From the IMG/VR virus record IMGVR_UViG_3300010885_076238, positions 140,312 through 204,311 of that record: DNA of 64,000 nucleotides. One strand, given 5' to 3'. Shown here in pieces: positions 26,601-53,760 of the stretch (positions within the stretch are counted from its first letter, which is position 1; each line of letters opens with the position of its first letter). The notes below the pieces were generated by a model that made no database searches, was not told the DNA's origin, and saw only the letters and a list, made by a program, of their open reading frames with translations. The position numbers were made by a program, and so were the translations under genes.

Positions 26601-27026
26601 ATGGATTTCAAATCATTTGATAAGAAAATAGTTGCAGCAGCTTCTGTAATTTATAATTCTGACAACAAGCTTCTTTTATTAAGAAGAGGACCAACAGCTC
26701 CTTGGATGCCGGGCAAATGGAATCTTCCTGGTGGCAATATTGATGAAAATGAAAGTGGTTTGCAAGCGGCGAAAAGAGAAGCAAAAGAAGAAATCAATAT
26801 TATTATAAATAATGCTCGTAGTTTAGGAATTGTTACTGAACAAGATTGGGGCGTTGCTTTCTTTTGTTGTTTAGATAATGAATGGTCGGGAAATCCCACA
26901 TTATCTGTTACTAATGGAATATTAGAAAATGATGATTTAGTATGGGAACTTCCAGAAAGTGCTCTTAAATATTCACTAGTTCCTACGGTAGATACAGCTA
27001 TAATCCGATCAATGAGATATTTATGA
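26601..27026 (+). CDS. NUDIX hydrolase
   Basis: PGGNIDENESGLQAAKREAKEEINI Nudix box. Confidence 0.9.
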   Translation: MDFKSFDKKIVAAASVIYNSDNKLLLLRRGPTAPWMPGKWNLPGGNIDENESGLQAAKREAKEEINIIINNARSLGIVTEQDWGVAFFCCLDNEWSGNPTLSVTNGILENDDLVWELPESALKYSLVPTVDTAIIRSMRYL

Positions 27027-27745
27027 TTAACGAAAGCCCAGATGCTATAAAACATAGAGAAGATATCGATAGTCCTTCTTATGGAGATCAAGACAGCGTA
27101 ACTTTTTCTTTATTTGATAACTTTACTGTCTACAGCCTAAGATACAACACAAGTCATGGAGACTTATACAAATTTGTAAGAATATACAGTAAGCCTTCAG
27201 ACATAGAATTATTTAAGTGGAGTGAGAACAGAGGCAAATATAGTTGGTATCTTGATCCAGAACAATTCAAGAAAAATTATGAAATATATCATAAAGGTGA
27301 ACTAACAGATAACGAAAAGAACAAAATTATAAATTTTGATATTTTTGAATTAGATAGAAGTCCAATACTAAAAGAATTTCCTAGTGTTATTCAGGGAAGA
27401 GCATGGACCGAGAGTAAAATGATTAGCTTCTGGAATGATTTGGTTTATATAGCTTCTAGAAAAGATGATATAATAAAATTTATTAATTTAATAGGAGGTA
27501 ATCCACATGCCTACCAATATGAAATCAAGGATAATTTATATAATTATGATGATTTTGTGTCGGGCAAATATAATGATAATTTAAAATTTGACCGCACAGT
27601 ACTTCATACTTTACCCCCAGATAAAAAGGGAGAAGCTTTAAAGAAAATGGGAGCTGCTCCTAAACAGCCAGTTCCTTTGCAGTTCAAACAAATGTTGCAA
27701 GGTGAGAGTTTTAGAAGTTGGCTGTATAAGCATGAGCAAAAATGA
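27023..27745 (+). CDS. Hypothetical protein, tandem paralog A
   Basis: QGR.W...KMISFWNDLVYIASRK shared with the next gene. Confidence 0.75.
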   Translation: MINESPDAIKHREDIDSPSYGDQDSVTFSLFDNFTVYSLRYNTSHGDLYKFVRIYSKPSDIELFKWSENRGKYSWYLDPEQFKKNYEIYHKGELTDNEKNKIINFDIFELDRSPILKEFPSVIQGRAWTESKMISFWNDLVYIASRKDDIIKFINLIGGNPHAYQYEIKDNLYNYDDFVSGKYNDNLKFDRTVLHTLPPDKKGEALKKMGAAPKQPVPLQFKQMLQGESFRSWLYKHEQK

Positions 27746-28410
27746 TTATAAATGAAAATCCAAATAATATAAAAACAGTTGCGAATACTCATTATGGAGC
27801 CTCTGGTGCTACTGCTTTTGTTTTATTTAATAAATTTTATGTGCATAGTGATTGGGCTTGGGCATCTCATGATACTTTATTAAGATATATTGCTTTATAC
27901 ATTCAACATGAAAAAAAAGAACTAGCTAATCAATTTAGAGAAAAAAATAAAATTAAGCATATTGGCGATCTAACAGGTGAAGAAGTAGATAAACTAAATA
28001 GTGAAAGGGATATTGATCGACATATTATTTTAGAAATTTCACCATATGTTATTCAAGGAAGATTGTGGAGAACCACTAAAATGATTAGCTTCTGGAATGA
28101 TTTGGTTTATATAGCTTCTAGAAAAAATGATATAATAAAATTTATTGAATCATTAAATAATGATCCTAAAAAATATCAATATGAAATAAAAGACAAGTTA
28201 TATGACTATAATCAATTTTTATCTGGAAAGTACACGGATGATTTAGATTTTGACCCAGAGGTTGTTCACATGCTTCCTCCAGATAAAAAGGGAGAAGCTT
28301 TGAAGAAAATGGGAGTACGTCCTAAAGCTCCAGTTCCTTTACAGTTCAAACAAATGGTTCAGGGTGAGAGTTTTAGAAGTTGGCTACAAAAAGGAGAAAA
28401 AAATGGTTAA
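27742..28410 (+). CDS. Hypothetical protein, tandem paralog B
   Basis: C-terminal half near-identical to 27023. Confidence 0.75.
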   Translation: MIINENPNNIKTVANTHYGASGATAFVLFNKFYVHSDWAWASHDTLLRYIALYIQHEKKELANQFREKNKIKHIGDLTGEEVDKLNSERDIDRHIILEISPYVIQGRLWRTTKMISFWNDLVYIASRKNDIIKFIESLNNDPKKYQYEIKDKLYDYNQFLSGKYTDDLDFDPEVVHMLPPDKKGEALKKMGVRPKAPVPLQFKQMVQGESFRSWLQKGEKNG

Positions 28411-28582
28411 TTTTTATGATTTTGAAATGATTATGGAAGGCAAGGGAGATGATGTTGTTAAATGTTCTTGTAAATGCAAAGCATGTAAATATAATTTTTG
28501 TAAAAATTGCAGTTGCAAAGATTGTAAATGTGAAGGTTGCAGATGTGAGAGTAATATTGGAAAAAATAAGAAAAATAACTAA
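28403..28582 (+). CDS. Metallothionein-like Cys-rich protein
   Basis: CSCKCKAC...CKNCSCKDCKCEGCRC; AAGGAG RBS. Confidence 0.6.
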   Translation: MVNFYDFEMIMEGKGDDVVKCSCKCKACKYNFCKNCSCKDCKCEGCRCESNIGKNKKNN

Positions 28583-28590
28583 TTTATAGC

Positions 28591-29202
28591 ATGACTTATA
28601 TATTTCAGCATATTCCTAGAACAGGCGGCATAACGTTATTATCTATTGTCAGGGAGGTTTATGATAATAATGATATAATTATAGATATTGACGGGAATAA
28701 CTTGTGTTACAAAATGCATGATCTTTTTTATTTACAAAAGTCTCCTAAGGCTATTTTTGGACATTTACCGTTTGGTATTCATAAATTATTAGACGGTGAA
28801 TTTTCTTATATAACGGTAATGAGAGATCCGGTAGAAAGAATTAAGAGTGTTATAAATCATTTGAACGAATCAAATATTTTAAATGTTGAAGAATATTTAA
28901 AAAATTATAGTCAGAATGATATGACAAAAGCATTTGTTTATAAGCCACACACCAAGAATGAAGAAGATCACTTAGAAGAAGCTAAAGATAACATTAAAAA
29001 ATATTATACTATTGGATTTACTTCTAATTTTAAAACATTTGTAAAGTCTTTAGGTAAAAAACTAGGTTGGACTCCTTTTTATTATATTAATAAAAATGAA
29101 AGTAGACCCTTGGTTGATTTTACAAAAAATGATATTAAAGAAATAAAAGAAAAAAATCAATTAGATATAAAGTTATATGAATGGGCCAAAAAAGAATTTT
29201 AA
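28591..29202 (+). CDS. Sulfotransferase family protein
   Basis: FQHIPRTGG, RDPVERIKS, N.LD..LY motifs. Confidence 0.85.
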   Translation: MTYIFQHIPRTGGITLLSIVREVYDNNDIIIDIDGNNLCYKMHDLFYLQKSPKAIFGHLPFGIHKLLDGEFSYITVMRDPVERIKSVINHLNESNILNVEEYLKNYSQNDMTKAFVYKPHTKNEEDHLEEAKDNIKKYYTIGFTSNFKTFVKSLGKKLGWTPFYYINKNESRPLVDFTKNDIKEIKEKNQLDIKLYEWAKKEF

Positions 29203-29463
29203 TTTGATATATAATTTTGGAAAAAAAAGGTAAAGATTTTGGTCGCATCACGCCAGAGGTAATTTTATGTCGTCTCAAATATTAGAAGTTTGCGTTCTTG
29301 TGATAAGTATTAGTTTCACATCTGTTGTGGCTATGGGAAGCTTATGCATGGTTTATGGTTTACTTATGGTGTTATTTGGGAAAGATGTTGATTAAATTGT
29401 GGTTTCCGCCTACTAAAAATATTTATTTGAAAAAGACTAGATAAAGAACACTGAGGAGAAAAA

Positions 29464-30012
29464 ATGAAAAATTTTCACGAATGGTTAGAAGAAAAACACC
29501 CTGAATCCCTAGAAGAGGGAATGTTTGGGGACTATATGAAAAAGGTTGCACTCCCAGTAACAGCTGCGATGGGGATGACAGCAGCACTCAGCGGAAACGT
29601 ACCGCAAACAAACAACAATAAGCCCGCCGTCGTCAGGGGTGTTGGACACGCTCAAGGAGCTTCAATGAAGCCACAGTCACAGCTACAAGATCTATACGGC
29701 CCCGAGCGAGATGATAATGGAAGACGATGGACGGATAATGAAGAATTCATGGACTATGCCGTACAGCAAGTTGAAAGACAGCTTGGGGGATCGCAGAGCA
29801 GCAGAATACCCAAACCAGAAGGATGGGACGATTTGAGCGACGACGCACAGTATCAAATATATAACCATGCCATCTACGCACTCGTTCAGCAACATGGCGT
29901 AAAAGACAAGGACGAACTTCAGAGTATGTTTGACAGGGAGACAGCTCAAGGAAGATATGACGGATCAAATCCTTATAGAATCAATTTCAATCCTGCTCAA
30001 TTCAATCGTTGA
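29464..30012 (+). CDS. Putative internal head protein
   Basis: N-terminal MKNFHEWLEE capsid-targeting-like sequence. Confidence 0.6.
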   Translation: MKNFHEWLEEKHPESLEEGMFGDYMKKVALPVTAAMGMTAALSGNVPQTNNNKPAVVRGVGHAQGASMKPQSQLQDLYGPERDDNGRRWTDNEEFMDYAVQQVERQLGGSQSSRIPKPEGWDDLSDDAQYQIYNHAIYALVQQHGVKDKDELQSMFDRETAQGRYDGSNPYRINFNPAQFNR

Positions 30013-30387
30013 ATGAAAACCTTCTATCAATATATTTCAGAAAATCATTTTGATCAATCATTATACACAATTAATGGTAAAAATTATAAAGTTTCTGAGC
30101 TTGCCGATTGGGCAAAGAAAAATCTACGTCCAGTTGCTTTGAATATCTCAGACATTCAAAGTAAGTATATTGATGCAAAAGGTTTGTTTATAGACGTAGA
30201 AAAAGGCGAAGATTGGTACGAAAGATCTATGAATGCAAATCTATCGTTTCCGATTTTAGTGTTGGAAAATCCAGATAACAAGTGGGAAATTATAGATGGA
30301 AACCATAGAGTCTGGAAAGCTTGGAAAACAGGAATGCAAACTATTAATGCATATCTAATTAATCCAAATTCTTTACAGCAAATTTAA
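30013..30387 (+). CDS. ParB/Srx-fold protein
   Basis: PILV...IIDGNHRVWKA; N-terminal MKTFYQYISE. Confidence 0.8.
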   Translation: MKTFYQYISENHFDQSLYTINGKNYKVSELADWAKKNLRPVALNISDIQSKYIDAKGLFIDVEKGEDWYERSMNANLSFPILVLENPDNKWEIIDGNHRVWKAWKTGMQTINAYLINPNSLQQI

Positions 30388-30480
30388 ATAAATTCCCATT
30401 TGGATAAAAAAATAATAGTTGTCAGTCGATTACGCCAATTAATAATTATTTATAAGTATGCTTAGCTGCAAGGAGGTTAA

Positions 30481-31092
30481 ATGGCATACAGTCAACTAGG
30501 TCAAGACGAATGGGTGGTTGGATTATACGGTAAAAACCCAGGATTTTTTGTTGACGTTGGTTTTAATGATGGAATAGTATTTTCTAATACTTATCTTCTT
30601 GAAAAAAAGGGTTGGATTGGCATAGGAATAGATCCATTTCCTTTTAATTATAAAAACAGACCCAGAACAATGATCTATGAAGATCTGGTTTATGACAAGT
30701 CGAACATTACTGTTGATGTTTGTGTTTGTGATGTTTATACTGGCGTTTTTGATGACATTCGCCGCCACAAAGAAAAAACTGTTGGCAAACCCATGGTGAG
30801 TTTAGTAACAAAGACTTTAGAGTCTGTGCTAGATGTTGCAAATTGTCCTAAGTTTATAGAATATTTATCATTAGACACTGAGGGTTCGGAGCATAAGATA
30901 TTATCTTCTTTTGATTTTAATAAATATTGTTTTGGTTGTATAACGGTTGAGCATAATCACGAGAAAGAAAAACGAAAAAATATTAGAAATAAACTAGAAG
31001 AAAATGGATATGAAATTTACAAGCAAGTAAAATTTGATGACTGGTACATCAAGTCTAGTATGAAAGAATATTTCAGTAAAAACCTACTATGA
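30481..31092 (+). CDS. FkbM-family methyltransferase
   Basis: YSQLGQD, FVDVG..DG...SNT, LSLDTEGSE. Confidence 0.88.
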   Translation: MAYSQLGQDEWVVGLYGKNPGFFVDVGFNDGIVFSNTYLLEKKGWIGIGIDPFPFNYKNRPRTMIYEDLVYDKSNITVDVCVCDVYTGVFDDIRRHKEKTVGKPMVSLVTKTLESVLDVANCPKFIEYLSLDTEGSEHKILSSFDFNKYCFGCITVEHNHEKEKRKNIRNKLEENGYEIYKQVKFDDWYIKSSMKEYFSKNLL

Positions 31093-31099
31093 TATTTTC

Positions 31100-31828
31100 A
31101 TGAACAAAGTTTATTATCATACGTTTGCTCCTTCTGAGAATTCCGTTAATATTATTATTGATTATTTTAAGAAATGTTTAGTTGACAATTTTTTTAATAA
31201 AATAGATCAATTTAATGTTATACTCACAGGTGATTTTCAACAAATAGCTTATAATGAGATGAAGAAGTTGTCAGATGATAAAAAAATTAATTTTATTATA
31301 AAGGAAAAGGCTTCTGAGGGTGAAACTTTGCTGCTTCTTTATGACGAAGCTTCTAATGAGGATAAAATTTTATATTTTCATTCGAAAGGAGTAACGCAGA
31401 TGAATAGTTTTTGTTTTAATAATGTAAAAGCTTGGTCGAATAAATTGCTATATTTTTTAGTAGACAAGGCAGAAGACTGTTTAAATTTCTTAGATAATTA
31501 TGATTTAGTTGGAGCTAATTATTGGGGAGAACACACAACAGATGATTGTCACAAGAGTTGCAATCAGGATAAAAAGCCTCCTCCTCATTTTTCTGGTAAT
31601 TTTTGGTGGACGAGGGGCGATTATATAAAAAAGCTTTCTAGGCCGGAGAACTTACAACGTGATTCTCACATAAATGGAAAAACGGATCAGGACCCTGAGT
31701 TCTGGATTTTTTCTACTAGACCGATTAGAATAGCAGCTATGAGCAATATTAAAATAAATCCTTATATTGATCCTAGTCTTTTTGAATCTTACAAGGATGA
31801 AACTCCCACATTTTCATTAATTAATTAA
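31100..31828 (+). CDS. Probable glycosyltransferase-like protein
   Basis: LYFHSKG...HFSGNFWW motif of large-virus glycosylation clusters. Confidence 0.55.
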   Translation: MNKVYYHTFAPSENSVNIIIDYFKKCLVDNFFNKIDQFNVILTGDFQQIAYNEMKKLSDDKKINFIIKEKASEGETLLLLYDEASNEDKILYFHSKGVTQMNSFCFNNVKAWSNKLLYFLVDKAEDCLNFLDNYDLVGANYWGEHTTDDCHKSCNQDKKPPPHFSGNFWWTRGDYIKKLSRPENLQRDSHINGKTDQDPEFWIFSTRPIRIAAMSNIKINPYIDPSLFESYKDETPTFSLIN

Positions 31829-32144
31829 TATGAAACAAATAGAAACAGAGATGAGTCTTGCCAAGAAGTATTTGAATGGGGATTACACAGACGTGCAATT
31901 GAATTACTGGGTAGTTCAGAATAAATTTGACAAACAAAAAATTGAAAATCTTATAGATTGTTTGAGAATGGCAGAGCCTTTTTTGGTCGCTACTAAATTA
32001 ATTATAGCTTTTATTTTGATAAATTATTTATTGGGATTTGCTTTATCTGTTATTTATTTTGTCCAATAATGGAAAAAATTTAATTTTATCTTGGTGGCAA
32101 TTTCATAAATATCTATTAGTACCAACAAGGTACAAGGAGGTATT

Positions 32145-32546
32145 ATGAAAAGGTTACTTGTGGGCTTATTTTTAGTCCTAGGATCAATTTCAGTTGTTTC
32201 TTCTGCTCAGGAGAGAATCATAAAGGTTGTTGATTTGGAAATCACATCTTATGAAGATTCATTAGTTTTGGCTAAGAATCAAGATAAAAAAGTTCTAGTT
32301 TTCTTTTCGGCAGATTATTGTGGATGGTGCAAAAAGCAAAAGGATGTTTTTTTAGAATCTGCTGTTGTGGATAAGATTAATGACTATGTTATTTGCTACG
32401 TTGACATGAGTAAAAAAGATTTGGTGTCAAAGTATAATGTTAGAACTATTCCAGCATATTTTGTTATTGATAAAAATGAAAAAATAATTAAGAAAAATAT
32501 TGGCTATAAAGAAAAGAATGATTTTATTAGATGGCTAGACAACTAA
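32145..32546 (+). CDS. Secreted thioredoxin-family protein
   Basis: Signal peptide, CGWC, TIP cis-Pro motif. Confidence 0.85.
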   Translation: MKRLLVGLFLVLGSISVVSSAQERIIKVVDLEITSYEDSLVLAKNQDKKVLVFFSADYCGWCKKQKDVFLESAVVDKINDYVICYVDMSKKDLVSKYNVRTIPAYFVIDKNEKIIKKNIGYKEKNDFIRWLDN

Positions 32547-32582
32547 TATTTTTTATACTATAATCTATTGAAAGGATTATTC

Positions 32583-33509
32583 ATGAATAAGTTTTTATTT
32601 ATATTTATTATTTTATTATCGAGGCCTGTTTTCTCTCAGGAGAAGACAGGCTTTGCTATTGATCCAAATGCAAATAATGTAGCTGCATTGTTTACAATGA
32701 CAGATGAAGGCGGAAGAACTAAGAATTTAGACTTAATGGACAGCATATTTAAAGATGGATCTTTAGGATTTGAATGTCAACGTTACCATAATGTTTCTTC
32801 TGTATTTATTTATAAAAAATTAACAGAGCTAGCTTTAAAATTAGAAGAGGACGCGACCTTACTGTTATATTTTAATAGTCATGGAGGAGGAAGCGGCGAC
32901 AGGTTTGCTATGACCGCTCAGGGTGGGAGTTTTAAATTTAGTAAAGCTTTAGAATCATTGGGCAAATCTAATAAAAAAATAAAAAGGCTTATATTCCTTG
33001 TGGATACTTGTCATGCTGCTGGAAGTATACAGGATAGTTTAAAGCAGGATGGGGAATTATTAAAAAACATTCAATCAGCAAAGCCTACTGATTATCTTCC
33101 TGAACTTTCTGACGCGGCAGTTTATAATCAGCGTCCATTTAGATCTATATTTGATATTAAAAATAATAAATTAGATTTCGGTGAAAATAGTGGGATTTAC
33201 AGTGAAATACTAATCATTAGTTCTTCTAGTGTTGAGGATCTTTCTATAAGGGGAGCATTTGCTTCTAGGTTGGCAACAACTTTTGGAAAAATTAAAGATA
33301 ATAAGGAAGTAACAGTTGGTCAGTTTTTGAAAAAGTTTGCAGATAGTCATTTGGCAAGTGGTCAACAACCTTATTACAAGATCCTTCCTGATAATTCCAT
33401 GTTTGATGAATTATTATTTGGAATACCTTATGCTAGATTGATTCCGATTGTTGATTGGGACAATGACAATAAAAATAAATCTGATTTCATCCCTTTGCCG
33501 AGATTATGA
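32583..33509 (+). CDS. Secreted caspase-fold (clan CD) protease-like protein
   Basis: LLLYFNSHG...FLVDTCHA His/Cys dyad; signal peptide. Confidence 0.7.
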   Translation: MNKFLFIFIILLSRPVFSQEKTGFAIDPNANNVAALFTMTDEGGRTKNLDLMDSIFKDGSLGFECQRYHNVSSVFIYKKLTELALKLEEDATLLLYFNSHGGGSGDRFAMTAQGGSFKFSKALESLGKSNKKIKRLIFLVDTCHAAGSIQDSLKQDGELLKNIQSAKPTDYLPELSDAAVYNQRPFRSIFDIKNNKLDFGENSGIYSEILIISSSSVEDLSIRGAFASRLATTFGKIKDNKEVTVGQFLKKFADSHLASGQQPYYKILPDNSMFDELLFGIPYARLIPIVDWDNDNKNKSDFIPLPRL

Positions 33510-34117
33510 ACAAAGTTTTTCAAATTGGATTTAATAAATGTGCAACGACTTCTTTTTTCTTGTTATTTGGAAAAACAACAAGACCAAGTGTAAAGTCTAT
33601 CCATTGGGATGTTGGAAGACTTGCTTATAAAATTCACAGAAACCATCTAGAAAACAAGCCTCTTCTTACTGGTTATGAGGAGTACACTTTTTTTAGTGAC
33701 ATAGAGGGGCCAATAGACGGAGACAAAAATTCTCCTTTGATATATGTTCATAAAGAATATTATAAAGATTTAGATAAACAATATCCAGATAGTAAATTTA
33801 TATTGAACACAAGAAATGTTTATGATTGGCTAGAAAGTAGAAAAAAACATTTAAATAGAAAAGACTATCAAATAAGATCGTATTTTGAAAGATGTAAATT
33901 TCATTATAAATTAAATGATCATCAGCTAGTTGAGAAATGGCTTTTGGAATGGGAAGATCATCATAACGATGTTTTAAATTATTTTAAAGATAGGCCAGAC
34001 GATTTATTGATTTATAATATTGATCATGATAATTTAGATAAAATTAAAAAATTCTTTCCCGAAATAAACTTTAGGTGCAAAGAATTTCCTTGGTCTAAAA
34101 AATTTAAGTGCTACTAG
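33506..34117 (+). CDS. Sulfotransferase family protein
   Basis: IGFNKCATTS, YPDSKFILNTR..W..S. Confidence 0.85.
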   Translation: MNKVFQIGFNKCATTSFFLLFGKTTRPSVKSIHWDVGRLAYKIHRNHLENKPLLTGYEEYTFFSDIEGPIDGDKNSPLIYVHKEYYKDLDKQYPDSKFILNTRNVYDWLESRKKHLNRKDYQIRSYFERCKFHYKLNDHQLVEKWLLEWEDHHNDVLNYFKDRPDDLLIYNIDHDNLDKIKKFFPEINFRCKEFPWSKKFKCY

Positions 34118-36117: not shown

Positions 36118-36174
36118 AATGAATTAATTTATTGAATTTATCAATACAATATATATATAATTTGGAGGTAATTT

Positions 36175-36384: not shown

Positions 36385-36408
36385 AATGCTCGTGTTCGGA
36401 ACAATTTC

Positions 36409-37179: not shown

Positions 37180-37743
37180 TTATACAAAAATTTCACCTTC
37201 GGCGTCGAAGCCGATATTTTGAGCCATAAGTTGTTTGTGTGTTGCTAAAATATCACTGACTGGTTGTAATGAAAAGTTGTTTTGCAATAATCGCCAAGTG
37301 TTTTTTATTTGCGATTGTTTGTGTGCTACTGGGGGTTTTTCTGTGAAGAACTCTCCTTGTCCTTCCCGTCCCAATTCTTCAAAATCAGTTTTTTTAAATG
37401 TTGATATCCAAGGTTTGTAGTCTTTAACAACTTGTACATCTTGTTGTCTAATATACAAAGTTTTCTTTGGTTTAGTAGGAACCAGTATCCAAGGCATATT
37501 CCTAGGTATTAGGTAAGATACAACATTGTGATATTTTCCAGCAAAAGCTCCTGATCTAAAACGTCCGGGTGTTGTTCCTTGTGGTGTTTGTGCCCAATTT
37601 GGAACTTCGTTTGGAACAGATGTTGGACCACTTTCACCATTGTTTGTAATATAAAATTGTCTAAGATTAGAGTGGTCCCCAAAATCTCTTTTTTCTGCGT
37701 CTATTCTGAATACACGATTTTCAAGCCATAATTTAAAGTTCAT
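37180..37743 (-). CDS. Putative internal head protein
   Basis: MNFKLWLE start at 37743. Confidence 0.65.
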   Translation of the reverse strand: MNFKLWLENRVFRIDAEKRDFGDHSNLRQFYITNNGESGPTSVPNEVPNWAQTPQGTTPGRFRSGAFAGKYHNVVSYLIPRNMPWILVPTKPKKTLYIRQQDVQVVKDYKPWISTFKKTDFEELGREGQGEFFTEKPPVAHKQSQIKNTWRLLQNNFSLQPVSDILATHKQLMAQNIGFDAEGEIFV

Positions 37744-37747: not shown

Positions 37748-37963
37748 TTATAAAATATAAGCTTCACCATTTTCAATTAATTTCAATATGAAATCGTAAG
37801 CTTTTCCTGAGTCTTTTCTTTCCATTTTTCTAATCTTATTATGATAAATTGAATCAACGATTATTGTTTTTCGTTCTCCATTTATATTAATGAGTATTCT
37901 TCCGTCTTTTGAATAACCGGTAAAGAGTACATTTTCATTTATAAAATCACGAAAGCTTTTCAT
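37748..37963 (-). CDS. Putative internal head protein
   Basis: MKSFRDFINE. Confidence 0.6.
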   Translation of the reverse strand: MKSFRDFINENVLFTGYSKDGRILININGERKTIIVDSIYHNKIRKMERKDSGKAYDFILKLIENGEAYIL

Positions 37964-38142: not shown

Positions 38143-38562
38143 TCATATTCCATATTGATCGTAATCTTCCTCTCCTGGGTGTTTTGAAATTCTACTATCA
38201 AGTTGTTTTTCTACATCTTGCTTCCATCCCATTTTATCTATATATTCATTTGTTTTTTTTATTAAATGATCTATATGATCCATGTAAGTGTTATAAGCTA
38301 ATCTAGCACTCATCTTTTTTTTATGATCATGTGATCCTGCTGAGTTTGAGTGATCAATATCTTCTTGAGACATTTTAATCATTTCTAATTCATCAGCATC
38401 TTCACCAAGACCTAACACTCTTAATTTTCTTACAAGATTATTATGATAGCTCTTATCTTGATAAACACCTTTATTTGGTCGGATATCATCCGCTTCCAAT
38501 AAATGAAAAAAAAGGTCAACCCATAAATCTTTTTTATCAAGCCATTCATAAAAGTTTTGCAT
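38143..38562 (-). CDS. Putative internal head protein
   Basis: MQNFYEWL...LLE. Confidence 0.6.
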   Translation of the reverse strand: MQNFYEWLDKKDLWVDLFFHLLEADDIRPNKGVYQDKSYHNNLVRKLRVLGLGEDADELEMIKMSQEDIDHSNSAGSHDHKKKMSARLAYNTYMDHIDHLIKKTNEYIDKMGWKQDVEKQLDSRISKHPGEEDYDQYGI

Positions 38563-38615: not shown

Positions 38616-38867
38616 ATGATGAGTGCCAAAAATTTTAGTTTTAAATTATGGTTGGAAGAAAACGCAGCACCAGCACCAGCACCAGCACCAGCACCAACTT
38701 CATCAACACCATCATCAACACAAACTTCGGATTCTGGATCTACCCTTTCTAAGGACATAGCAAAGGTGCCGACCAAAGTGGGATGCAGCACTGTTAGTTG
38801 TTGCAGTAAAGATTTTTTCAGAAATTGGCATTACAAAAAAAAGAGAAAAAAGAGGAAGAAAAAATGA
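38616..38867 (+). CDS. Small protein with AP repeat and basic tail
   Basis: FSFKLWLEE, APAPAPAP, KKKRKKRKKK. Confidence 0.55.
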   Translation: MMSAKNFSFKLWLEENAAPAPAPAPAPTSSTPSSTQTSDSGSTLSKDIAKVPTKVGCSTVSCCSKDFFRNWHYKKKRKKRKKK

Positions 38868-39679
38868 AAACGGGTTTCTGTTTTACAGGAGAAGGAGCTA
38901 GAGGAGCAATACAAGCAGGAATAGCCTTGGGTTTGCATAATCAAGGCATAAATGCTGACTTTACAATTGGAATATCATCAGGATCTATTTGTGCTGCTTC
39001 ATATGCGTATCTAGGACCTAAAGGATTAGCTGAAATGTGGTCTAATGTTAATAATATTTTTGATGTTTTTGGAATTAATTATAATTTAATTGGCAAAACA
39101 GGACTATTGAATCAGAAGCCAATGCAAAAAATCTTGCAAAAAGCGATGGAAAACGAACCAATATGTGAAAGCGTTGTTATTAGAATGAATATAGAAGATG
39201 GTTATTTAGACTATGTGTCAAATAAAGATGTATCTTCTAGCGAATTCGCAGAAGCAGTTTTAGGAAGCGTAGCCATTACTGCTTTAGTAGAAGATAGAAA
39301 TGGCTGGGTAGATGCTGGGAGTCGTCAAATAGCCCCTCTAGATCAATGTATAAGGGCAGGTTGTGATAATATCTATGTGATTATGGGTAGGCCTCTTCAT
39401 TTGCCTCCTTGGCAAAAACCTAAAGGTTTATTTAAATTATTTAATATGGCATTTAGGGCGTTCGATATAACCCTCTATGAAATAATGATTAGAGATATAA
39501 ATAGTTGCATAAGGGACAAGTCACACCCCGATTTCAAAAATGTAAATATTTTTTTAGTAGAGCCTAAAGAATTATTTTATGAAAGCGTTGAATTTGCCAA
39601 ATGCAAAAAAGGCGTTGTTTATGGGACAACAGAATACAACAGACATGATAAAAAAGGATTGAGAAAATTTATAAAATGA
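38864..39679 (+). CDS. Patatin-like phospholipase
   Basis: GEGARG, GISSG, DAG motifs. Confidence 0.85.
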   Translation: MKTGFCFTGEGARGAIQAGIALGLHNQGINADFTIGISSGSICAASYAYLGPKGLAEMWSNVNNIFDVFGINYNLIGKTGLLNQKPMQKILQKAMENEPICESVVIRMNIEDGYLDYVSNKDVSSSEFAEAVLGSVAITALVEDRNGWVDAGSRQIAPLDQCIRAGCDNIYVIMGRPLHLPPWQKPKGLFKLFNMAFRAFDITLYEIMIRDINSCIRDKSHPDFKNVNIFLVEPKELFYESVEFAKCKKGVVYGTTEYNRHDKKGLRKFIK

Positions 39680-39942
39680 ACTTCAAAGAATGGCTTATGA
39701 AAGAAGGTTCTAATACCGGATCTAAAACTGGTCTGTACCCTTTGGGATACGGAGGCGTAGGTTTGTATCCTCCATCATGGTACATAACAAGAAGCGCAGA
39801 TGCAATTTATTATTTCACAATTGATGAAAGAATATATAAATCTAAGGATGGAGGTCTTTTTGATATTAGTCATATTCCAGGCAATAATATAAAACAAAAC
39901 TCTGGCGAGGGTGGATCTTGGAACATTACGAAAATAAAATAA
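39676..39942 (+). CDS. Putative internal head protein
   Basis: MNFKEWLMKE. Confidence 0.6.
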   Translation: MNFKEWLMKEGSNTGSKTGLYPLGYGGVGLYPPSWYITRSADAIYYFTIDERIYKSKDGGLFDISHIPGNNIKQNSGEGGSWNITKIK

Positions 39943-43904: not shown

Positions 43905-43908
43905 AAAA

Positions 43909-44044: not shown

Positions 44045-44059
44045 ATAAATCTAATTATA

Positions 44060-44466: not shown

Positions 44467-44520
44467 TTGTTTTCATCCTTGATGGGTTAATGTGAGTATA
44501 CCAGAATAACAATTAAATAA

Positions 44521-44551
44521 AAAGGGAGGATTGTTTTCACAATCCTCCCTT
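44521..44551 (-). terminator. Intrinsic terminator after tmRNA
   Basis: agggaggattg-ttttca-caatcctccct with a T-run on the minus strand. Confidence 0.8.
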
Positions 44552-44553
44552 AG

Positions 44554-44902: not shown

Positions 44903-44913
44903 TTCACGGAATA

Positions 44914-45156
44914 TTATAGTTCATTATCGGCAAAAGTAAACTCTTCTTCTTTAATTAATCCTCTTGAAATTAAATATTCAAAAGTATCAAATAATTTTTT
45001 ACATTTTAGTTCATGCAATTGAGCTATTCCTATAAGAGCGTTTGAAATTTCATCTGCTTCTAGATTGTAATCCAAAATAGATTCGGCCAAAAGACTAACG
45101 TCGTCTTTTGTGTTCCAACACTTCATTATTTGCTCTTCTAAATCAAAACGATTCAT
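44914..45156 (-). CDS. Conserved phage hypothetical protein (RFDLEEQIM.CW)
   Basis: Familiar large-phage motif; AAGGA RBS. Confidence 0.7.
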   Translation of the reverse strand: MNRFDLEEQIMKCWNTKDDVSLLAESILDYNLEADEISNALIGIAQLHELKCKKLFDTFEYLISRGLIKEEEFTFADNEL

Positions 45157-45178
45157 GATTATTCCTTTTTAAAGTTAC

Positions 45179-46342: not shown

Positions 46343-46360
46343 TGTGATAAGAATCCTAAA

Positions 46361-46434
46361 TCTAGGTGGAGGGAATTGAACTCTCGACCTCTTGCTCCCA
46401 AAGCAAGCGTTCTGCCAGACTGAACTACACCTAG
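46361..46434 (-). tRNA. tRNA-Pro(TGG)
   Basis: CTTGC-TTTGGGA-GCAAG. Confidence 0.93.
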
Positions 46435-46438
46435 TAAG

Positions 46439-46511
46439 TGGAGAAGATGGGACTCAAACCCACAACCTCCGCGTTGCAAACGCGATGCTCTATCAATTGA
46501 GCTACTTCCCC
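46439..46511 (-). tRNA. tRNA-Ala(TGC)
   Basis: G3.U70; loop TTTGCAA. Confidence 0.92.
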
Positions 46512-46515
46512 TTAG

Positions 46516-46586
46516 TTCCGGGACTACGATTCGAACGTAGAAAAAAAGAACCAAAATCTTTTGTGATACCGTTTCACCATCCCGGA
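46516..46586 (-). tRNA. tRNA-Gln(TTG)
   Basis: AAAGA-TTTTGGT-TCTTT. Confidence 0.9.
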
Positions 46587-46603
46587 GAATTACATGAATC
46601 GAG

Positions 46604-46676
46604 AGCGGGTGATCGGGTTCGAACCGACGACAGTTTGATTGGAAATCAAAAACTCTACCAACTGAGTTACACCCGC
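46604..46676 (-). tRNA. tRNA-Gly(TCC)
   Basis: GCGGGTG acceptor, U73, loop TTTCCAA. Confidence 0.93.
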
Positions 46677-46679
46677 AAA

Positions 46680-46752
46680 AGCTAGCGGTCGGAATTGAAC
46701 CGACGACAGGCAGTTTACAAAACTGCTACTCTACCAACTGAGTTACGCTAGC
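46680..46752 (-). tRNA. tRNA-Thr(TGT)
   Basis: GCAGT-TTTGTAA-ACTGC. Confidence 0.93.
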
Positions 46753-49460: not shown

Positions 49461-50777
49461 ATGAATTTTTTATTATACTGTCAAAATAAAGAAAAATACA
49501 ATGAGGCTTTTTTAGACTCTATGACAAAGAGTTTCAAGTCCAGTTATGATCAGTCTCAGCAAGGAATTGATCAAAATTATGAGAAATACACAGATGTAGC
49601 AAAGCAAGCTTTATCAAAGGCTGGCAGCACAGCAAAAATGCTTTCTCAGAAAACGGGAGTTCCTCTTCCTTTAGCAACCGCACTTATAGCAGCTGGAATG
49701 ACCGGAGGACCAACAGCAATTCCATTTGCTGCACTCCTTTATTTTGTCAAACAACCACTAATGAAAGGTGCAAATAAAGCATTTGATTCGACTTGGGATG
49801 CTGGGGCCAAGGCTGTTCAGGGCGTTAGAAATGCTGTTTCTAGAGACCAACCTCAGTCACAGGCCCAATTGCAACCTGAATCTTTTAGGGCATTTATAGA
49901 AGCCGATAGTTGGGGAGATTGGGCAGGAGAGAAATTGGGAGGAGCCGCCGGAACTGTTGCTGGGAATTTAGCAGGATATGGTGGAAAGATTGCCACCTCA
50001 ATAGGCAGTAGAATGAAAGAAATTGGGCAGTACGCTAAAAATAATCCAAAAGAAGTTGCAAGAATGGCATTTTTGGTAGGTGCTGGTGCCGCTATTGGTG
50101 CTGGAGTGGGTAAAATCACTCATGAGGTCAAAGATTTCATAATGGAAAAAATAAAAGACCAAGGAATAGATCCACAAGTTCTTAGCTGGGTGAAACAAAA
50201 TGTGGTATTAGATGATAACGGAAAGTCGGCAACTTCAAGTAGAATTACTTCTAAAGGCGGACAAGAAGTAAATCATCCTTATTTCATCAACGATGACGGA
50301 CACAAAGTTTACGGCGATCAATCAATTTCAACAACAGATAAATTATTGGGAAACAAGGGGGTAAGTAACCCTGGGCCTAGTGATCTTCATGGTCACGGTA
50401 GAGGAATTGGAATGACCACAACTTCAAGTAGTACCGGAGGTTCAAATACACTTACTAGAGTTGGCGTCCCGAGCAGTCCCGATTTAAGAGACACCTATAG
50501 AGATGCTGCAAGAGTTCTGCAAGGAGAGTATAAACCTGGGGTTCTTGGTGGCATTTTAGGAGGGGATGCAGAAAGAAGTGACGCAACAAATGCAATGCTT
50601 CAGTCTTCTCCTACTCCATTAACTTCTAAATTAGATTTAAAACATTACGGTCATAGTGGCTCTGAAGAAATTGCCAAAAGATTGGCTGCTGCAAAAGCAC
50701 AGTTCTCACCAGACACTTATACTAGAGCTGGGGCGATGGCGGGCGGAGCGGTTGGCGGAACAGGCAATAGGAGATAA
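49461..50777 (+). CDS. Gly/Ala-rich putative ejected/internal protein
   Basis: Hydrophobic glycine-zipper helices; internal ESFRAFIEA. Confidence 0.6.
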   Translation: MNFLLYCQNKEKYNEAFLDSMTKSFKSSYDQSQQGIDQNYEKYTDVAKQALSKAGSTAKMLSQKTGVPLPLATALIAAGMTGGPTAIPFAALLYFVKQPLMKGANKAFDSTWDAGAKAVQGVRNAVSRDQPQSQAQLQPESFRAFIEADSWGDWAGEKLGGAAGTVAGNLAGYGGKIATSIGSRMKEIGQYAKNNPKEVARMAFLVGAGAAIGAGVGKITHEVKDFIMEKIKDQGIDPQVLSWVKQNVVLDDNGKSATSSRITSKGGQEVNHPYFINDDGHKVYGDQSISTTDKLLGNKGVSNPGPSDLHGHGRGIGMTTTSSSTGGSNTLTRVGVPSSPDLRDTYRDAARVLQGEYKPGVLGGILGGDAERSDATNAMLQSSPTPLTSKLDLKHYGHSGSEEIAKRLAAAKAQFSPDTYTRAGAMAGGAVGGTGNRR

Positions 50778-51662: not shown

Positions 51663-51709
51663 ATTTTTTCCCCATAAAAATCTACAATAAAATAGTAATA
51701 AAAAAAATT

Positions 51710-53011
51710 TTATTCCAATTGTTTTTTAAACATTTCTTTAATTTTTTCTTTATTAATAGTTTTAATTAATTGGTTTCTTGCAAAAGGATGCGAATTAGAA
51801 AGTTCAGCAGAATTCCATCCAACTAATTCTTCTCTATTTGGGACAAATTTAGCAAAGGCTTTAACCATTTTTGTCCATTTTGGTTTTAGACTTCTTCCTT
51901 CTACATTGAAGAGTTCGACCCAATTTCTTATTTGTTCTTCTGATAGTCCTGAGATTTTTTTACTTGCAAGTAAATCTTCTAAGTTATCTAAATTGAAATC
52001 TTTGAGTTTCAACAAACAAACAACTGCACATTTTTCTTGACTAGTCCAGTTTGACAAGACATTTTCAACTTCATCTATTGGATTGTCTTGTAATATCCAT
52101 GCTAAGGCCAAGATTTTATCTTTTTTATTAGAAAAATCAGGAGGAACATCTAAATTTAAAGAAACATTTTTAAATATTTTTTCTAAAAGTCCAACTTTGC
52201 TATAGTTTTCCAAATATTTTCTTGGATCAATATCAGGATTGGTGAGTCCTTTCAAGAATTCTTCTCTTATTTTTTCATAAGGAAGACTATCAACTTCTGA
52301 TCTTAATTCTGCTATTGCCTTTTTTATATCTTTATCTAATTCACCCTTTCCGTATTGAGAATAAAATCTTATTGTTCTCATCATTCTTAGTTTATCTTCT
52401 CTAAATTTAGTCTCAGGATTTCCTATAGATTTTATATTGCCATGGACTATATCGTACCATCCCTTTTTAGTTGGATCGTATAATTTATTATTTTCCCCAT
52501 CAGATTTTGATAATTCAATATACAAAGAGTTTATGGTGAGATCTCTTCTTTGGGAATCATGTTCGATGTTATCTGTGTATTGGTCGCCTTTCATAAGTGT
52601 TGAAATTTGAAATTCGTCTCCTTCAACATTAACGATTACATTGTTTCCTTCTATTGTGAAAGATTTCTTATGATTATCTTGAGAAAATCCATAATTTTTA
52701 AGTATGATTGATACTTGTTTTGGAGTGGCATCAGTTGCGAGGTTGTAATTCTTGGGAGTTTTATTTCTCAAGAAATCCCGAACAGAACCGCCTGTTAAGT
52801 ATAGGGATTTTCTAGGCATCTTAATTTCTTTCGAAGTATCTTTCATTAAAGAAATATCACTGCTTTCTTCAAAAGCTTTTATAATTGGCTTCATGTTTGA
52901 TGGTGGTACAAAGCCTTTTTCTAATTTTATAAATTCTTTCTTCCAATCCTTATTTTCGGTTTGTTCCGAGTTTTCTATTTTGGATTCAAGAAATTTCTTA
53001 AAAGATTTCAC
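51710..53011 (-). CDS. Class II CCA-adding/poly(A) polymerase homolog with DxD replaced by NxN
   Basis: GGSVRD..PKNYNLATDATP, RRDLTINSL, EDKLRMMR.IRF; GTG start with GGAGG RBS. Confidence 0.85.
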   Translation of the reverse strand: MKSFKKFLESKIENSEQTENKDWKKEFIKLEKGFVPPSNMKPIIKAFEESSDISLMKDTSKEIKMPRKSLYLTGGSVRDFLRNKTPKNYNLATDATPKQVSIILKNYGFSQDNHKKSFTIEGNNVIVNVEGDEFQISTLMKGDQYTDNIEHDSQRRDLTINSLYIELSKSDGENNKLYDPTKKGWYDIVHGNIKSIGNPETKFREDKLRMMRTIRFYSQYGKGELDKDIKKAIAELRSEVDSLPYEKIREEFLKGLTNPDIDPRKYLENYSKVGLLEKIFKNVSLNLDVPPDFSNKKDKILALAWILQDNPIDEVENVLSNWTSQEKCAVVCLLKLKDFNLDNLEDLLASKKISGLSEEQIRNWVELFNVEGRSLKPKWTKMVKAFAKFVPNREELVGWNSAELSNSHPFARNQLIKTINKEKIKEMFKKQLE

Positions 53012-53760
53012 ATTTCCTCCTCTTCTCTTTGCCAATTATAATCACCACTAGCAGTTTTTTTCTTATTATATTTGAATACGTTAATTAAAATAAAATAACC
53101 ATTTTTTTCCAAATTCATTTGTTTTTCAATGGTTGGATTTTCTATATCGTATATATTTTGCATTTTTTTATCTTTATCTTTTAATCTTAATTGATTATAA
53201 ATTTTAATTTTAGACAAAGCGGTTGTAAATTCTAAAGCAATATTATAAAGAGACATTTTGTAATTTCCAACAATGTCTTTATTTTCTGTCTCTAAACCTT
53301 CATAATAAGGTTGAAACTTATTTTCAAAATTTGAATTATTAAGTTCGCCAACCTGAACTACTCGGGGATCTCTTTCAGGTTCTGGGATTATTTGTGAAAC
53401 TTTAAAGAACGTATGTCTTCTATTAGAAATGGAAATGGGATTCCAACCTTCAGGCACGTTGTCTGGGCCAAATGGCATCTGTAGGACCATGTTGTCTTGA
53501 ACCATTTGATCTTTGGTAAATAAATCAAGTTTTAAAATTGTACTAGCAGCATCAACAGGCCCCGTTTCTTTTCTCATTCTATCGCCCATGGCTTGAACCA
53601 AATTGCCAGCAACTGTTAGTGGAATGCCAGGTTCATTCGAATGGCCGAACGTAGAATAAGGGCTTAGTTTTCCTATTCTTAAATTTTGAAGGTCAGCGGC
53701 AGCAGATCGAACTTTGCCAGTGGCTTCTTTTATTTGTATCCATTCACTAAATTTTTTCAT
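53008..53760 (-). CDS. Putative internal head protein
   Basis: MKKFSEWIQIKE start at 53760. Confidence 0.6.
   Translation of the reverse strand: MKKFSEWIQIKEATGKVRSAAADLQNLRIGKLSPYSTFGHSNEPGIPLTVAGNLVQAMGDRMRKETGPVDAASTILKLDLFTKDQMVQDNMVLQMPFGPDNVPEGWNPISISNRRHTFFKVSQIIPEPERDPRVVQVGELNNSNFENKFQPYYEGLETENKDIVGNYKMSLYNIALEFTTALSKIKIYNQLRLKDKDKKMQNIYDIENPTIEKQMNLEKNGYFILINVFKYNKKKTASGDYNWQREEEEM

What the first reader, a model, noticed from the sequence alone, without database searches (positions are those of the whole stretch)
27023..53760. Family of T4-like capsid-targeting sequences, including C-terminal and internal copies
Seen at N-termini: MKNFHEWLEE (29464), MKTFYQYISE (30013), MKFSLWLE (36175), MNFKLWLE (37743), MKSFRDFINE (37963), MQNFYEWL (38562), FSFKLWLEE (38616), MNFKEWLMKE (39676), MKSFKKFLE (53011), MKKFSEWIQIKE (53760). 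The same pattern is C-terminal in 27023 and 27742 (ESFRSWL..xE) and internal in 49461 (ESFRAFIE). Established: the T4 IPIII targeting peptide is MKTYQEFIAE, cut by the prohead protease after E. Inference: a large co-injected protein cargo, with a position-independent packaging signal.
Basis: partly seen in the sequence, partly recalled or inferred. Interest (0 to 1): 0.6.

Follow-up and report, generated by a model that had tools for sequence, protein, structure and literature searches.

The report
T4-like capsid-targeting tags in a megaphage
A fragment of an uncultured giant phage carries a short tag, nearly the same as the phage T4 "capsid targeting sequence", on at least 13 unrelated proteins in this window, so these proteins are probably loaded into the virus head and delivered with the DNA; no virion has yet been examined.

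Summary
All ten listed N-termini exist at the stated starts. A scoring matrix trained only on a distant relative (LR756511, 595 kb) finds the motif 32 times more often at start codons than elsewhere in this genome (p = 2e-12).

Consensus: M-K-(T/S/N)-F-(K/R)-(E/Q)-(W/F)-(L/I/V), then Glu at about residue 10 or 12. The conserved positions (4, 7, 8, 10) are the ones mapped experimentally as targeting and processing determinants of the T4 IPIII sequence MKTYQEFIAE.

Relatives encode a T4-type head module in T4 gene order: gp20-like portal, gp21-family Peptidase_S77 protease, gp23-like capsid protein. This contig ends about 47 kb short of where that module should lie.

Synonymous codons vary, so selection acts on the peptide. 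Syntenic orthologs in 13 related contigs keep the tag.

The C-terminal copy is invariant in all 15 homologs of its family. The internal copy is conserved in 53 of 55 homologs (the other two are truncated N-terminally); that family also carries an N-terminal copy.

Carriers include a CCA-adding enzyme.

Best reading: T4-type capsid targeting propeptides, greatly expanded in T4-related megaphages. This is a new variant of a known kind. Packaging and cleavage are inferred, not shown.

The parts
29464..29499 (+). N-terminal tag MKNFHEWLEE|K of the 182-aa protein 29464-30012. Glu at residue 10, the same register as T4.
   Evidence: (13.6 bits)
30013..30048 (+). N-terminal tag MKTFYQYISE|N of the 124-aa protein 30013-30387 (phrog_17560). 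The closest copy to T4 MKTYQEFIAE.
   Evidence: 12.3 bits
36175..36210 (+). N-terminal tag MKFSLWLERRNQ of a 69-aa, very basic (pI 11) protein 36175-36384. Orthologs in L050 and L051 keep the tag.
37708..37743 (-). N-terminal tag MNFKLWLENRVF of the 187-aa protein 37180-37743. Its LR756511 ortholog (31% identity) starts MLNFKGWWEN.
   Evidence: (14.2 bits)
37928..37963 (-). N-terminal tag MKSFRDFINE|N of the 71-aa protein 37748-37963.
   Evidence: (12.9 bits)
38527..38562 (-). N-terminal tag MQNFYEWLDKKD of the 139-aa protein 38143-38562. A TATATA box lies 4 nt upstream of the ATG and there is no Shine-Dalgarno sequence.
   Evidence: (14.0 bits)
38616..38660 (+). Near-N-terminal tag MMSAKNFSFKLWLEE of an 83-aa basic protein 38616-38867 (poly-Lys tail). 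The motif starts at residue 7.
   Evidence: (13.7 bits)
39676..39711 (+). N-terminal tag MNFKEWLMKE|G of the 88-aa protein 39676-39942. Orthologs in L049 and L050 (about 70% identity) keep it. Of three weaker matches in LR756511, one keeps the tag (MDFKGWFYTE) and one has lost it.
   Evidence: (13.8 bits)
52976..53011 (-). N-terminal tag (GTG start) MKSFKKFLESKI of the CCA-adding / poly(A) polymerase-family enzyme 51710-53011. The catalytic head domain starts only at residue 70.
   Evidence: tag conserved in the orthologs of 9 IMG/VR loci and LR756511, followed by an indel-rich Glu-rich linker
53725..53760 (-). N-terminal tag MKKFSEWIQIKE|A of the 250-aa protein 53008-53760. Its syntenic counterparts in 12 of the 13 related loci (homology confirmed by tblastn for four) start M(N/K/R)F(K/N/R/S)(E/Q)WL.
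   Evidence: (13.5 bits)
27704..27742 (+). C-terminal copy ESFRSWLYKHEQK, the last 13 residues of the 240-aa protein 27023-27745.
   Evidence: (13.3 bits, rank 11)
28366..28407 (+). C-terminal copy ESFRSWLQKGEKNG, the last 14 residues of the 222-aa paralog 27742-28410. It forms a terminal helix on a floppy tail outside the folded domain.
   Evidence: 15.2 bits, rank 4; E209, F211, L215 invariant in 15 homologs
49878..49901 (+). Internal copy ESFRAFIE (residues 140-147) of the 438-aa protein 49461-50777. Predicted as a short isolated helix between disordered stretches.
   Evidence: (F142 invariant; E140, S141, E147 in at least 90% of sequences)
49461..49505 (+). Diverged N-terminal copy MNFLLYCQNKEKYNE|A on the same 438-aa protein. 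Homologs start MKTFTLYC, MRTFNEWAL or MEFNNWLIE. F3 is at least 90% conserved and E15 is invariant.
55866..55901 (+). Additional N-terminal copy MKFSSFIDIKNK of a 158-aa protein 55866-56342 inside the structural module. Orthologs start MKFSSF(V/I/L)D and MLEFKEFIDKKE.

Best explanation
The window belongs to a 204-kb fragment of an uncultured megaphage whose relatives build their heads with T4-type machinery. The repeated peptide is the clade's version of the T4 capsid targeting sequence (CTS).

Proposed mechanism:
1. The tag is a short amphipathic helix: aromatic at residue 4, aromatic at 7, aliphatic at 8.
2. It docks the protein onto the scaffolding core of the prohead.
3. The gp21-family prohead protease then cuts after a nearby Glu, usually residue 10 or 12 and often in a [LIV]-x-E context, and releases the mature protein inside the head.
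4. The protein leaves the head with the DNA at infection.

The tag has been grafted onto many unrelated proteins: at least 13 in this window, about 20 on the contig, and about 50 in the 595-kb relative. They include small basic proteins and enzymes such as a CCA-adding enzyme. In two families the same helix sits at the C-terminus or inside the chain, preceded by a conserved Glu, so the signal seems to work away from the N-terminus as well.

Shown: the motif, its enrichment at N-termini, selection at peptide level, conservation in orthologs and families, its position outside folded domains, and T4-type head genes in relatives.

Inferred: docking to the core, cleavage, packaging and injection.
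For: 1. Enrichment at start codons with a matrix trained on another genome: odds ratio 32, p = 2e-12.
2. Conserved columns relative to the anchoring Phe (residue 4 in the canonical MKTF form): T/N/S at -1, K/R at +1, E/Q at +2, W/F/Y at +3, L/I/V/F at +4, E at +5 and at +8. T4 IPII and IPIII are MKTYQEFIAE. In T4, targeting maps to residues 4 and 7 and processing to residues 8 and 10 (PMC9026906).
3. The relative LR756511 has Peptidase_S77 (96 bits), a Gp23-like capsid protein (290 bits) and a T4-type portal (249 bits), in the order portal, protease, coiled-coil ORF, capsid protein.
4. The closer relatives G002 and G005 (64-69% identity in the 439-aa marker protein) carry the protease and capsid protein 56-58 kb downstream of that marker. 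That is beyond the end of this contig.
5. Positive control: the megaphage-trained matrix ranks gp61.1, IPII and IPIII as the three best N-termini in T4.
6. Synonymous codons vary (TTT/TTC; five Leu codons), and W/F/Y exchanges need several base changes. Selection is therefore on the peptide.
7. Syntenic orthologs in 13 IMG/VR loci keep the tag while the linker after it is indel-rich.
8. [LIV]-x-E lies within 16 residues after the motif in 35 of 76 carriers, against 20% of controls (p = 7e-7).
9. C-terminal and internal copies are conserved in 15 homologs and in 53 of 55 homologs. In AlphaFold models they form isolated helices on flexible segments.
10. In LR756511 many carriers sit 4-5 nt downstream of a TA[N]ATA box resembling the T4 late promoter. 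The same box precedes the capsid gene.
11. T4 itself has C-terminal propeptides, on Alt and gp21 (PMC9026906).
Against: - No virion or proteome data exist for this phage or any relative.
- The head module is not on this contig. PF03420, PF07068 and PF07230 give no match in it.
- Only 46% of carriers have a T4-like [LIV]-x-E site, and only three window copies have Glu exactly at residue 10.
- Some carriers (CCA-adding enzyme, HAD RNA-repair domain, a primase-like protein) are enzymes that normally act in the cytoplasm.
- About 5% of all genes in the relative carry the tag, far more than the handful in T4.
- T4 gp61.1 has the motif but is annotated only as a hypothetical protein, so the motif alone does not prove packaging.
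- A single-sequence search with T4 gp55 found no late sigma factor.
Confidence: 0.62

Rival explanations
1. The helix is a general docking motif for another hub, not the prohead core. Candidates are a chaperone, an unfoldase or protease (a terminal degron), a replication or transcription factory, or the membrane (as with the amphipathic anchors of MinD, FtsA and MreB). The resemblance to the T4 CTS would then be convergent.
For: - The motif works as a terminal or linker helix at the N-terminus, the C-terminus or internally, as short linear motifs and terminal degrons do.
- Carriers include cytoplasmic enzymes.
- LR756511 encodes a ClpP-like protein near the syntenic region, judged from the translation alone.
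- About 50 carriers is many for head cargo.
Against: - The conserved positions coincide one-to-one with the experimentally mapped T4 CTS determinants.
- The clade has T4-type head genes.
- The Glu-rich flanks (E at +2, +5, +8) argue against binding to anionic membranes.
- A degron cannot easily explain the internal conserved copy.
- Carriers share a late-promoter-like box with the capsid gene.
Confidence: 0.2
2. The conserved 5' coding sequence is an RNA or translation signal. It would serve leaderless late mRNAs (initiation context, regulator binding site) or act as a recombination cassette at DNA level, and the peptide itself would have no function.
For: - In LR756511, 65 candidate ATG starts have a TA[N]ATA box 4-5 nt upstream, implying leaderless or near-leaderless mRNAs.
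- By eye, roughly 40% of the 88 starts with the box 3-7 nt upstream begin with the motif; 18 of them match the stricter pattern.
- T4 internal-protein loci are known to shuffle around conserved CTS-coding DNA (own knowledge, not checked here).
Against: - Synonymous codons vary freely. Conservative amino-acid exchanges (TGG to TTT, TTC or TAC; Leu, Ile, Val, Met) preserve chemistry, not bases.
- Many carriers have ordinary Shine-Dalgarno leaders or are translationally coupled.
- The same peptide is conserved at C-termini and inside proteins, far from any start codon.
Confidence: 0.05
3. Chance, or shared ancestry of paralogs: an AT-rich genome often starts proteins with MK.F, or the carriers are one duplicated gene family.
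For: - The loose pattern F..[WFY][LIM] occurs 92 times in the proteome.
- The two C-terminal carriers are 50% identical paralogs.
Against: - Odds ratio 32 at start codons with an independently trained matrix.
- T4, also AT-rich, gives a single N-terminal hit of 11.5 bits or more in 274 ORFs.
- Apart from that pair, no window carrier matched another by tblastn at E <= 1e-3, and those with Pfam hits fall in different families.
Confidence: 0.02

Closest known systems
Capsid targeting sequence (CTS) of phage T4 internal proteins IPII and IPIII (MKTYQEFIAE), removed by prohead protease gp21 (Mullaney and Black 1996; reviewed in PMC9026906, PMC3012670, PMC5694885)
   Same: - A propeptide-sized tag of 10-12 residues beginning at Met.
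- Aromatic at residues 4 and 7, aliphatic at 8, Glu at 10.
- Carried by otherwise unrelated, fast-evolving proteins.
- The phage clade has gp20, gp21 and gp23 homologs in T4 gene order.
- A megaphage-trained matrix recovers IPII and IPIII in T4.
   Different: - Phe/Trp are preferred over Tyr/Phe.
- A 12-residue form (…W-L-x-h-K-E) is as common as the 10-residue form.
- There are tens of carriers per genome instead of a handful, including enzymes such as a CCA-adding enzyme.
- Conserved C-terminal and internal copies exist.
- Packaging and cleavage are unproven here.
N-terminal propeptides of head and ejection proteins in giant phages phiKZ, 201phi2-1 and SPN3US (cleaved at S/A/G-x-E or A-x-E by a gp21-related protease; PMC5694885)
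   Same: Giant phages with a T4-related prohead protease that cuts after Glu and many internal head proteins. Propeptides are thought to target proteins into the prohead.
   Different: Those propeptides are mostly longer than 100 residues and share no common short motif. Here the tag is short, stereotyped and T4-like, and the capsid protein, portal and protease match the T4 Pfam families directly.
Cargo-loading peptides of encapsulins (own knowledge, not checked here)
   Same: A short terminal peptide, N- or C-terminal, that loads unrelated cargo enzymes into an HK97-fold shell.
   Different: The sequence is different, it binds the shell protein itself, it is not removed by a protease, and there is no DNA or injection.
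C-terminal processing of T4 Alt and gp21 (PMC9026906)
   Same: A precedent that T4-type head proteins can carry a propeptide at the C-terminus that gp21 removes.
   Different: The review describes these as processed ends and does not report a CTS-like sequence there. Here the C-terminal tail carries the same F-x-x-W-L helix as the N-terminal tags.

Membership tests
T4-type capsid targeting sequence (CTS) | Short (10-20 residue) N-terminal peptide starting at Met, with the targeting determinants at residues 4 and 7 (aromatic in T4: Y4, F7) | tested here: met
   All ten listed N-termini, plus 49461 and 55866, have Phe at residue 3-5 (residue 9 in 38616) and W, F or Y three residues later. T4 reference read; determinants from PMC9026906.
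T4-type capsid targeting sequence (CTS) | Processing determinants: aliphatic residue followed two positions later by Glu ([LI]-x-E, residues 8 and 10 in T4), with cleavage after Glu | tested here: inconclusive
   Exact T4 register in 29464 (LEE), 30013 (ISE) and 37963 (INE). IKE at residue 12 in 53760. [LIV]-x-E lies within 16 residues in 46% of 76 carriers against 20% of controls. Other carriers have only K-E or no clear site. Cleavage itself is untested.
T4-type capsid targeting sequence (CTS) | The phage encodes a gp21-family prohead protease (Pfam PF03420, Peptidase_S77) with a T4-type portal and capsid protein | tested here: inconclusive
   No match on this 204-kb contig. It is a fragment that ends inside the structural module. 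The features are met in LR756511 and in the closer relatives G002 and G005, where the protease and capsid protein lie 56-58 kb downstream of the syntenic marker.
T4-type capsid targeting sequence (CTS) | Modular tag on otherwise unrelated proteins | tested here: met
   Carriers include a CCA-adding enzyme, a phrog_17560 protein, small basic proteins and proteins with no family. Apart from the 27023/27742 pair, no window carrier matched another by tblastn.
T4-type capsid targeting sequence (CTS) | Tagged proteins are incorporated into proheads and found, processed, in virions | not testable with these tools
   No cultured relative and no proteome. A fold of scaffold, protease and tag gave no verdict.
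T4-type capsid targeting sequence (CTS) | The signal is N-terminal | tested here: not met
   This applies to two families only. The 27023/27742 family has the tag at the extreme C-terminus in all 15 homologs. The 49461 family has a conserved internal copy at residues 140-147. These are departures from the T4 definition.
phiKZ/SPN3US-type long propeptides | Propeptides mostly longer than 100 residues, cleaved at (S/A/G)-x-E, with no shared short motif | tested here: not met
   The tags are 10-15 residues long and stereotyped. The description of the family comes from PMC5694885.

The most novel reading that the evidence does not exclude
T4-related megaphages use one short helix (F-x-x-W/F-L, flanked by Glu) as a position-independent address label. 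It would load about 5% of their proteome into the capsid for co-injection, including tRNA-repair enzymes (a CCA-adding enzyme, and a HAD RNA-repair domain in the relative). C-terminal and internal labels would be excised by the prohead protease, so that one label can carry or separate several cargo domains. One homolog, P0014, has two QGE-(S/G)-F junctions. If so, the motif would be a sequence-only predictor of the ejected proteome of uncultured giant phages.
Probability: 0.3. Interest if true: 0.8.

Novelty: new variant of a known kind. Interest (0 to 1): 0.62.

Why it matters
- Internal and ejected proteins are a phage's first weapons inside the cell. In T4 they include anti-restriction proteins.
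- For uncultured megaphages there is no virion proteomics, so a short sequence label that marks packaged proteins would make their injected arsenal predictable from metagenomes alone.
- A packaged CCA-adding enzyme, next to a tRNA and tmRNA cluster, would point to immediate repair of tRNAs attacked by host defences.
- A capsid-targeting tag that works at either end of a protein, or inside it, would widen the T4 packaging toolbox used to load foreign proteins into capsids.
- My two full-text searches that combined capsid targeting with huge, jumbo or mega phages found no paper describing such a motif in them.

Tried and rejected
- **Family scans.** Pfam and PHROGs on the carriers gave almost nothing beyond the CCA enzyme and phrog_17560.
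- **Near-identical DNA search.** Megablast of window 27000-40000 against the phage collection found no match.
- **Relatives of the C-terminal family.** The search for related loci with the 27742 protein found none in IMG/VR. The large protein search was needed.
- **Fold searches.** The C-terminal-family model found no known fold with Foldseek against the PDB or with the wide VIA search (best Z 4.6).
- **Complex prediction.** Scaffold-like protein, S77 protease and the first 45 residues of a tagged protein of relative G002 gave no verdict (score 0.00). This is not evidence either way.
- **Late sigma factor.** T4 gp55 as a single-sequence query against this contig, G002 and LR756511 found nothing. 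This says little, because no positive control or profile was used.
- **First T4 control.** The first matrix required Phe at the anchor and therefore could not score the Tyr of T4. I retrained it allowing F, Y or W.
- **Alternative genetic code.** Tested as an explanation for the lower ORF density in window 1-26,000. No stop codon behaves as sense.
- **Literature.** Searches for LR756511 and for the T4 peptide string found nothing useful.
- **Not used.** Read laying and the look-up of sequencing runs were not used.

Full report
**What the window is.** The window is bases 140312-204311 of a single 204,311-bp linear IMG/VR viral contig. It carries 11 tRNA genes and a tmRNA gene. It ends inside an open frame of more than 2,353 codons.

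The only relative in the phage collection is LR756511.1, an uncultured phage of 595 kb. It shares 45% amino-acid identity with the 439-aa protein encoded at window 54547-55866. Thirteen IMG/VR contigs are closer, at 60-77% identity in that protein. Gene order around it is conserved: CCA enzyme, a protein of about 230 aa, the 439-aa protein, a protein of about 160 aa, one of about 190 aa, then the giant protein.

**The observation.** 53011 is a GTG start behind AGGAGG. At 38616 the motif begins at residue 7.

A loose pattern, F..[WFY][LIM], is already five times enriched at residues 2-5 of ORFs, both in this genome and in LR756511.

For an independent test I trained a 10-column log-odds matrix only on LR756511 N-termini and scanned all 59,633 positions of this genome's ORFs.
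- 14 of the 19 best positions are directly at start codons.
- At 11.5 bits or more there are 13 hits in 3,294 N-terminal placements against 7 in 56,339 other positions (odds ratio 32, p = 2e-12).
- T4, also AT-rich, gives one such N-terminal hit in 274 ORFs.

**Anatomy of the motif.** Anchored on the Phe, the enriched columns are T/N/S at -1, K/R at +1, E/Q at +2, W/F/Y at +3, L/I/V/F at +4, E at +5, K/R at +7 and E at +8. This gives M-K-T-F-K-E-W-L-E-x-K-E, with a 10-residue and a 12-residue form.

Synonymous codons vary freely (TTT/TTC about 2:1; five Leu codons; ACA, ACG and ACT). The W/F/Y and L/I/V/M exchanges preserve chemistry rather than bases. Selection is therefore on the peptide.

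Orthologs keep the tag. The CCA enzyme starts MKSFKEF(I/L/V) in the nine IMG/VR loci whose ortholog I aligned and MRTTFLEFMGLKE in LR756511. An indel-rich, Glu-rich linker follows, before the conserved catalytic domain. The syntenic counterparts of the 53760 protein (homology confirmed by tblastn for four loci) start M(N/K/R)F(K/N/R/S)(E/Q)WL in 12 of the 13 loci. The 37743 protein and its 31%-identical LR756511 ortholog both carry it.

**Link to T4.** Read from the T4 record, IPII and IPIII begin MKTYQEFIAE. According to the review PMC9026906:
- the first ten residues of IPIII suffice for incorporation into the head;
- targeting depends mainly on residues 4 and 7;
- processing depends on residues 8 and 10.

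These are the four positions conserved here. T4 gp21 and its giant-phage relatives all cut after Glu (PMC5694885).

The clade has the matching machinery. LR756511 encodes a Peptidase_S77 protease (96 bits), a Gp23-like capsid protein (290 bits) and a T4-type portal (249 bits). Their order is portal, a 616-aa ORF, protease, a coiled-coil 310-aa ORF, capsid protein.

The closer relatives G002 and G005 carry the protease and capsid protein 56-58 kb downstream of the 439-aa marker. In G002 a tagged protein (MTNFKEWLISE|A) sits between portal and protease.

By the same spacing, this phage's head module would lie about 47 kb beyond the contig end. That explains the absence of these families here.

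As a positive control, a matrix trained only on LR756511 and allowing F, Y or W at the anchor ranks gp61.1 (MKTFKEFIKE), IPII and IPIII as the three best N-termini of the whole T4 proteome.

**Cleavage context.** A [LIV]-x-E site lies within 16 residues after the motif in 35 of 76 carriers from three genomes, against 20% of other N-termini or internal windows (p = 7e-7).
- Three window copies have Glu at residue 10, as in T4: LEE, ISE and INE.
- 53760 has IKE at residue 12.
- More than half of the carriers lack a T4-like site, so the specificity of this clade's protease may be looser, or not all tags are removed.

**C-terminal and internal copies.** The 27023 and 27742 proteins are 50%-identical tandem paralogs. 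Fifteen homologs (44-64% identical to the 27742 protein) all end with GE(S/G)F(R/K)x(W/F)L, and E209, F211 and L215 are invariant.

One homolog, P0014, has about 140 extra residues inserted after QGESF and ends again in QGEGFRSWL. The junction-plus-tail unit is therefore repeated.

The AlphaFold model has a confident domain at residues 20-165 and a low-confidence tail whose last helix (209-220) is the motif. No known fold was found for the domain.

The 49461 protein has 55 homologs. The internal SF(R/K)x(F/W)(I/L/V), preceded by LQPE, is conserved in 53 of them; the other two are truncated N-terminally. In the 43-sequence alignment F142 is invariant. The same family also carries an N-terminal copy: F3 is at least 90% conserved and E15 is invariant.

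In the model the internal motif is an isolated helix (140-147) between disordered stretches.

T4 offers a partial precedent, since Alt and gp21 lose C-terminal propeptides. That the conserved Glu before these copies is a cleavage site is my speculation.

**Expression signal.** In LR756511 (42% GC) a TA[N]ATA box lies 4 or 5 nt upstream of 65 candidate ATG starts, against 2 to 13 at other distances. By eye, roughly 40% of the 88 starts with the box 3-7 nt upstream begin with the motif; 18 match the stricter pattern.

The box resembles the T4 late promoter TATAAATA (own knowledge). It also precedes the capsid gene and the 616-aa head gene, there followed by a normal Shine-Dalgarno leader. This suggests that tagged genes are late and often leaderless.

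On this AT-rich contig the signal is not distinctive. Only 38562 shows the clean arrangement. No gp55 homolog was found by a single-sequence search.

**Cargo.**
- Window carriers: the CCA-adding / poly(A) polymerase-family enzyme, whose head domain starts at residue 70; a phrog_17560 protein; two very basic small proteins with pI 10-11; and proteins without any family.
- In LR756511, carriers also include a HAD domain of the 'Swiss Army Knife' RNA-repair type, about 700 bp downstream of the CCA enzyme gene, and an AstE/AspA-like domain.
- Genes between the carriers encode accessory enzymes: FkbM and TylF methyltransferases, a sulfotransferase, a caspase-like peptidase, a patatin-like lipase and an FGE-sulfatase domain protein.

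**Verdict.** The best explanation is a T4-type capsid targeting propeptide, much expanded in a clade of T4-related megaphages and also used at C-terminal and internal positions (confidence about 0.6).

The main rival is a docking motif for some other hub (about 0.2). An RNA-level or translation signal (about 0.05) and chance or paralogy (about 0.02) are largely excluded by codon variation, non-N-terminal conservation and the statistics. The remaining probability is unassigned.

Packaging, cleavage and injection remain inferences. The structure-based binding test gave no verdict.

This is a new variant of a known kind. In my two full-text searches that combined capsid targeting with huge, jumbo or mega phages I found no description of such a motif in them.

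Noticed in passing
LR756511 (loci L012-L041), e.g. record positions 44740, 123909, 192700, 574780; window 38563-38572: A TA[N]ATA box lies exactly 4-5 nt upstream of 65 candidate ATG starts, with no Shine-Dalgarno sequence. It resembles a T4 late promoter placed so that the mRNA would be leaderless. The capsid gene and a 616-aa head gene have the same box, followed by a normal leader.
   Followed up: partly
window 1-26600 (genome 124-167 kb): An island of about 43 kb has 40-52% GC against about 32% elsewhere and lower ORF density. It encodes an SNF2 helicase (4471-6189), a DUF932 protein (17546-18487) and three tRNAs. Just upstream of the window it also encodes VWA, DUF2201 metallopeptidase and AAA_5 proteins. 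No stop-codon reassignment is evident. It may be a horizontally acquired segment.
   Followed up: partly
window 43110-46752: A cluster of eight tRNA genes (Tyr, Trp, Ser, Pro, Ala, Gln, Gly, Thr) and a tmRNA gene (tag GTNSYAMAA) lies on the minus strand, about 5 kb from the tagged CCA-adding enzyme.
   Followed up: no
window 56942-64000: An open frame of more than 2,353 codons runs off the contig end. It has long tandem peptide repeats (…SFDKVKNLAPKSITNFAK… and …GLLSKGAGMAKGLAGKAG…). The repeats probably broke the assembly. Homologs have 1,640 aa in LR756511 and 2,082 aa in G002.
   Followed up: no
T4 record AF158101, 18966-19130 (minus strand): T4 gp61.1, a 54-aa hypothetical protein next to the primase gene, begins MKTFKEFIKE. 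This scores better against the megaphage motif than IPII and IPIII do. I did not check whether it is a head protein.
   Followed up: partly
protein P0014 (homolog of window 27742-28410): This 367-aa homolog has about 140 extra residues inserted between QGESF and a second QGEGFRSWL tail, as if two cargo domains shared one C-terminal tag with repeated junctions.
   Followed up: no
LR756511 531419-533587 (L038 11014-13587, minus strand): The portal ORF has 857 aa and the T4-portal match covers only part of it. The G002 portal has 831 aa. The extra sequence may be an insertion or a large extension. It was not analysed.
   Followed up: no
window 34114-36117 (minus strand); genome 35-1234: Pro-Thr repeat linkers (PTPTPT) join domains in a 667-aa protein with an FGE-sulfatase domain. 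The same kind of linker occurs in the first ORF of the contig.
   Followed up: no
window 54547-54590: The 439-aa conserved structural-module protein starts MKNNLEDWLVEFE (LR756511: MTDRINLEDWLDQF). This is a Leu-for-Phe look-alike of the tag. It is conserved between the two phages and was not scored as a member.
   Followed up: no
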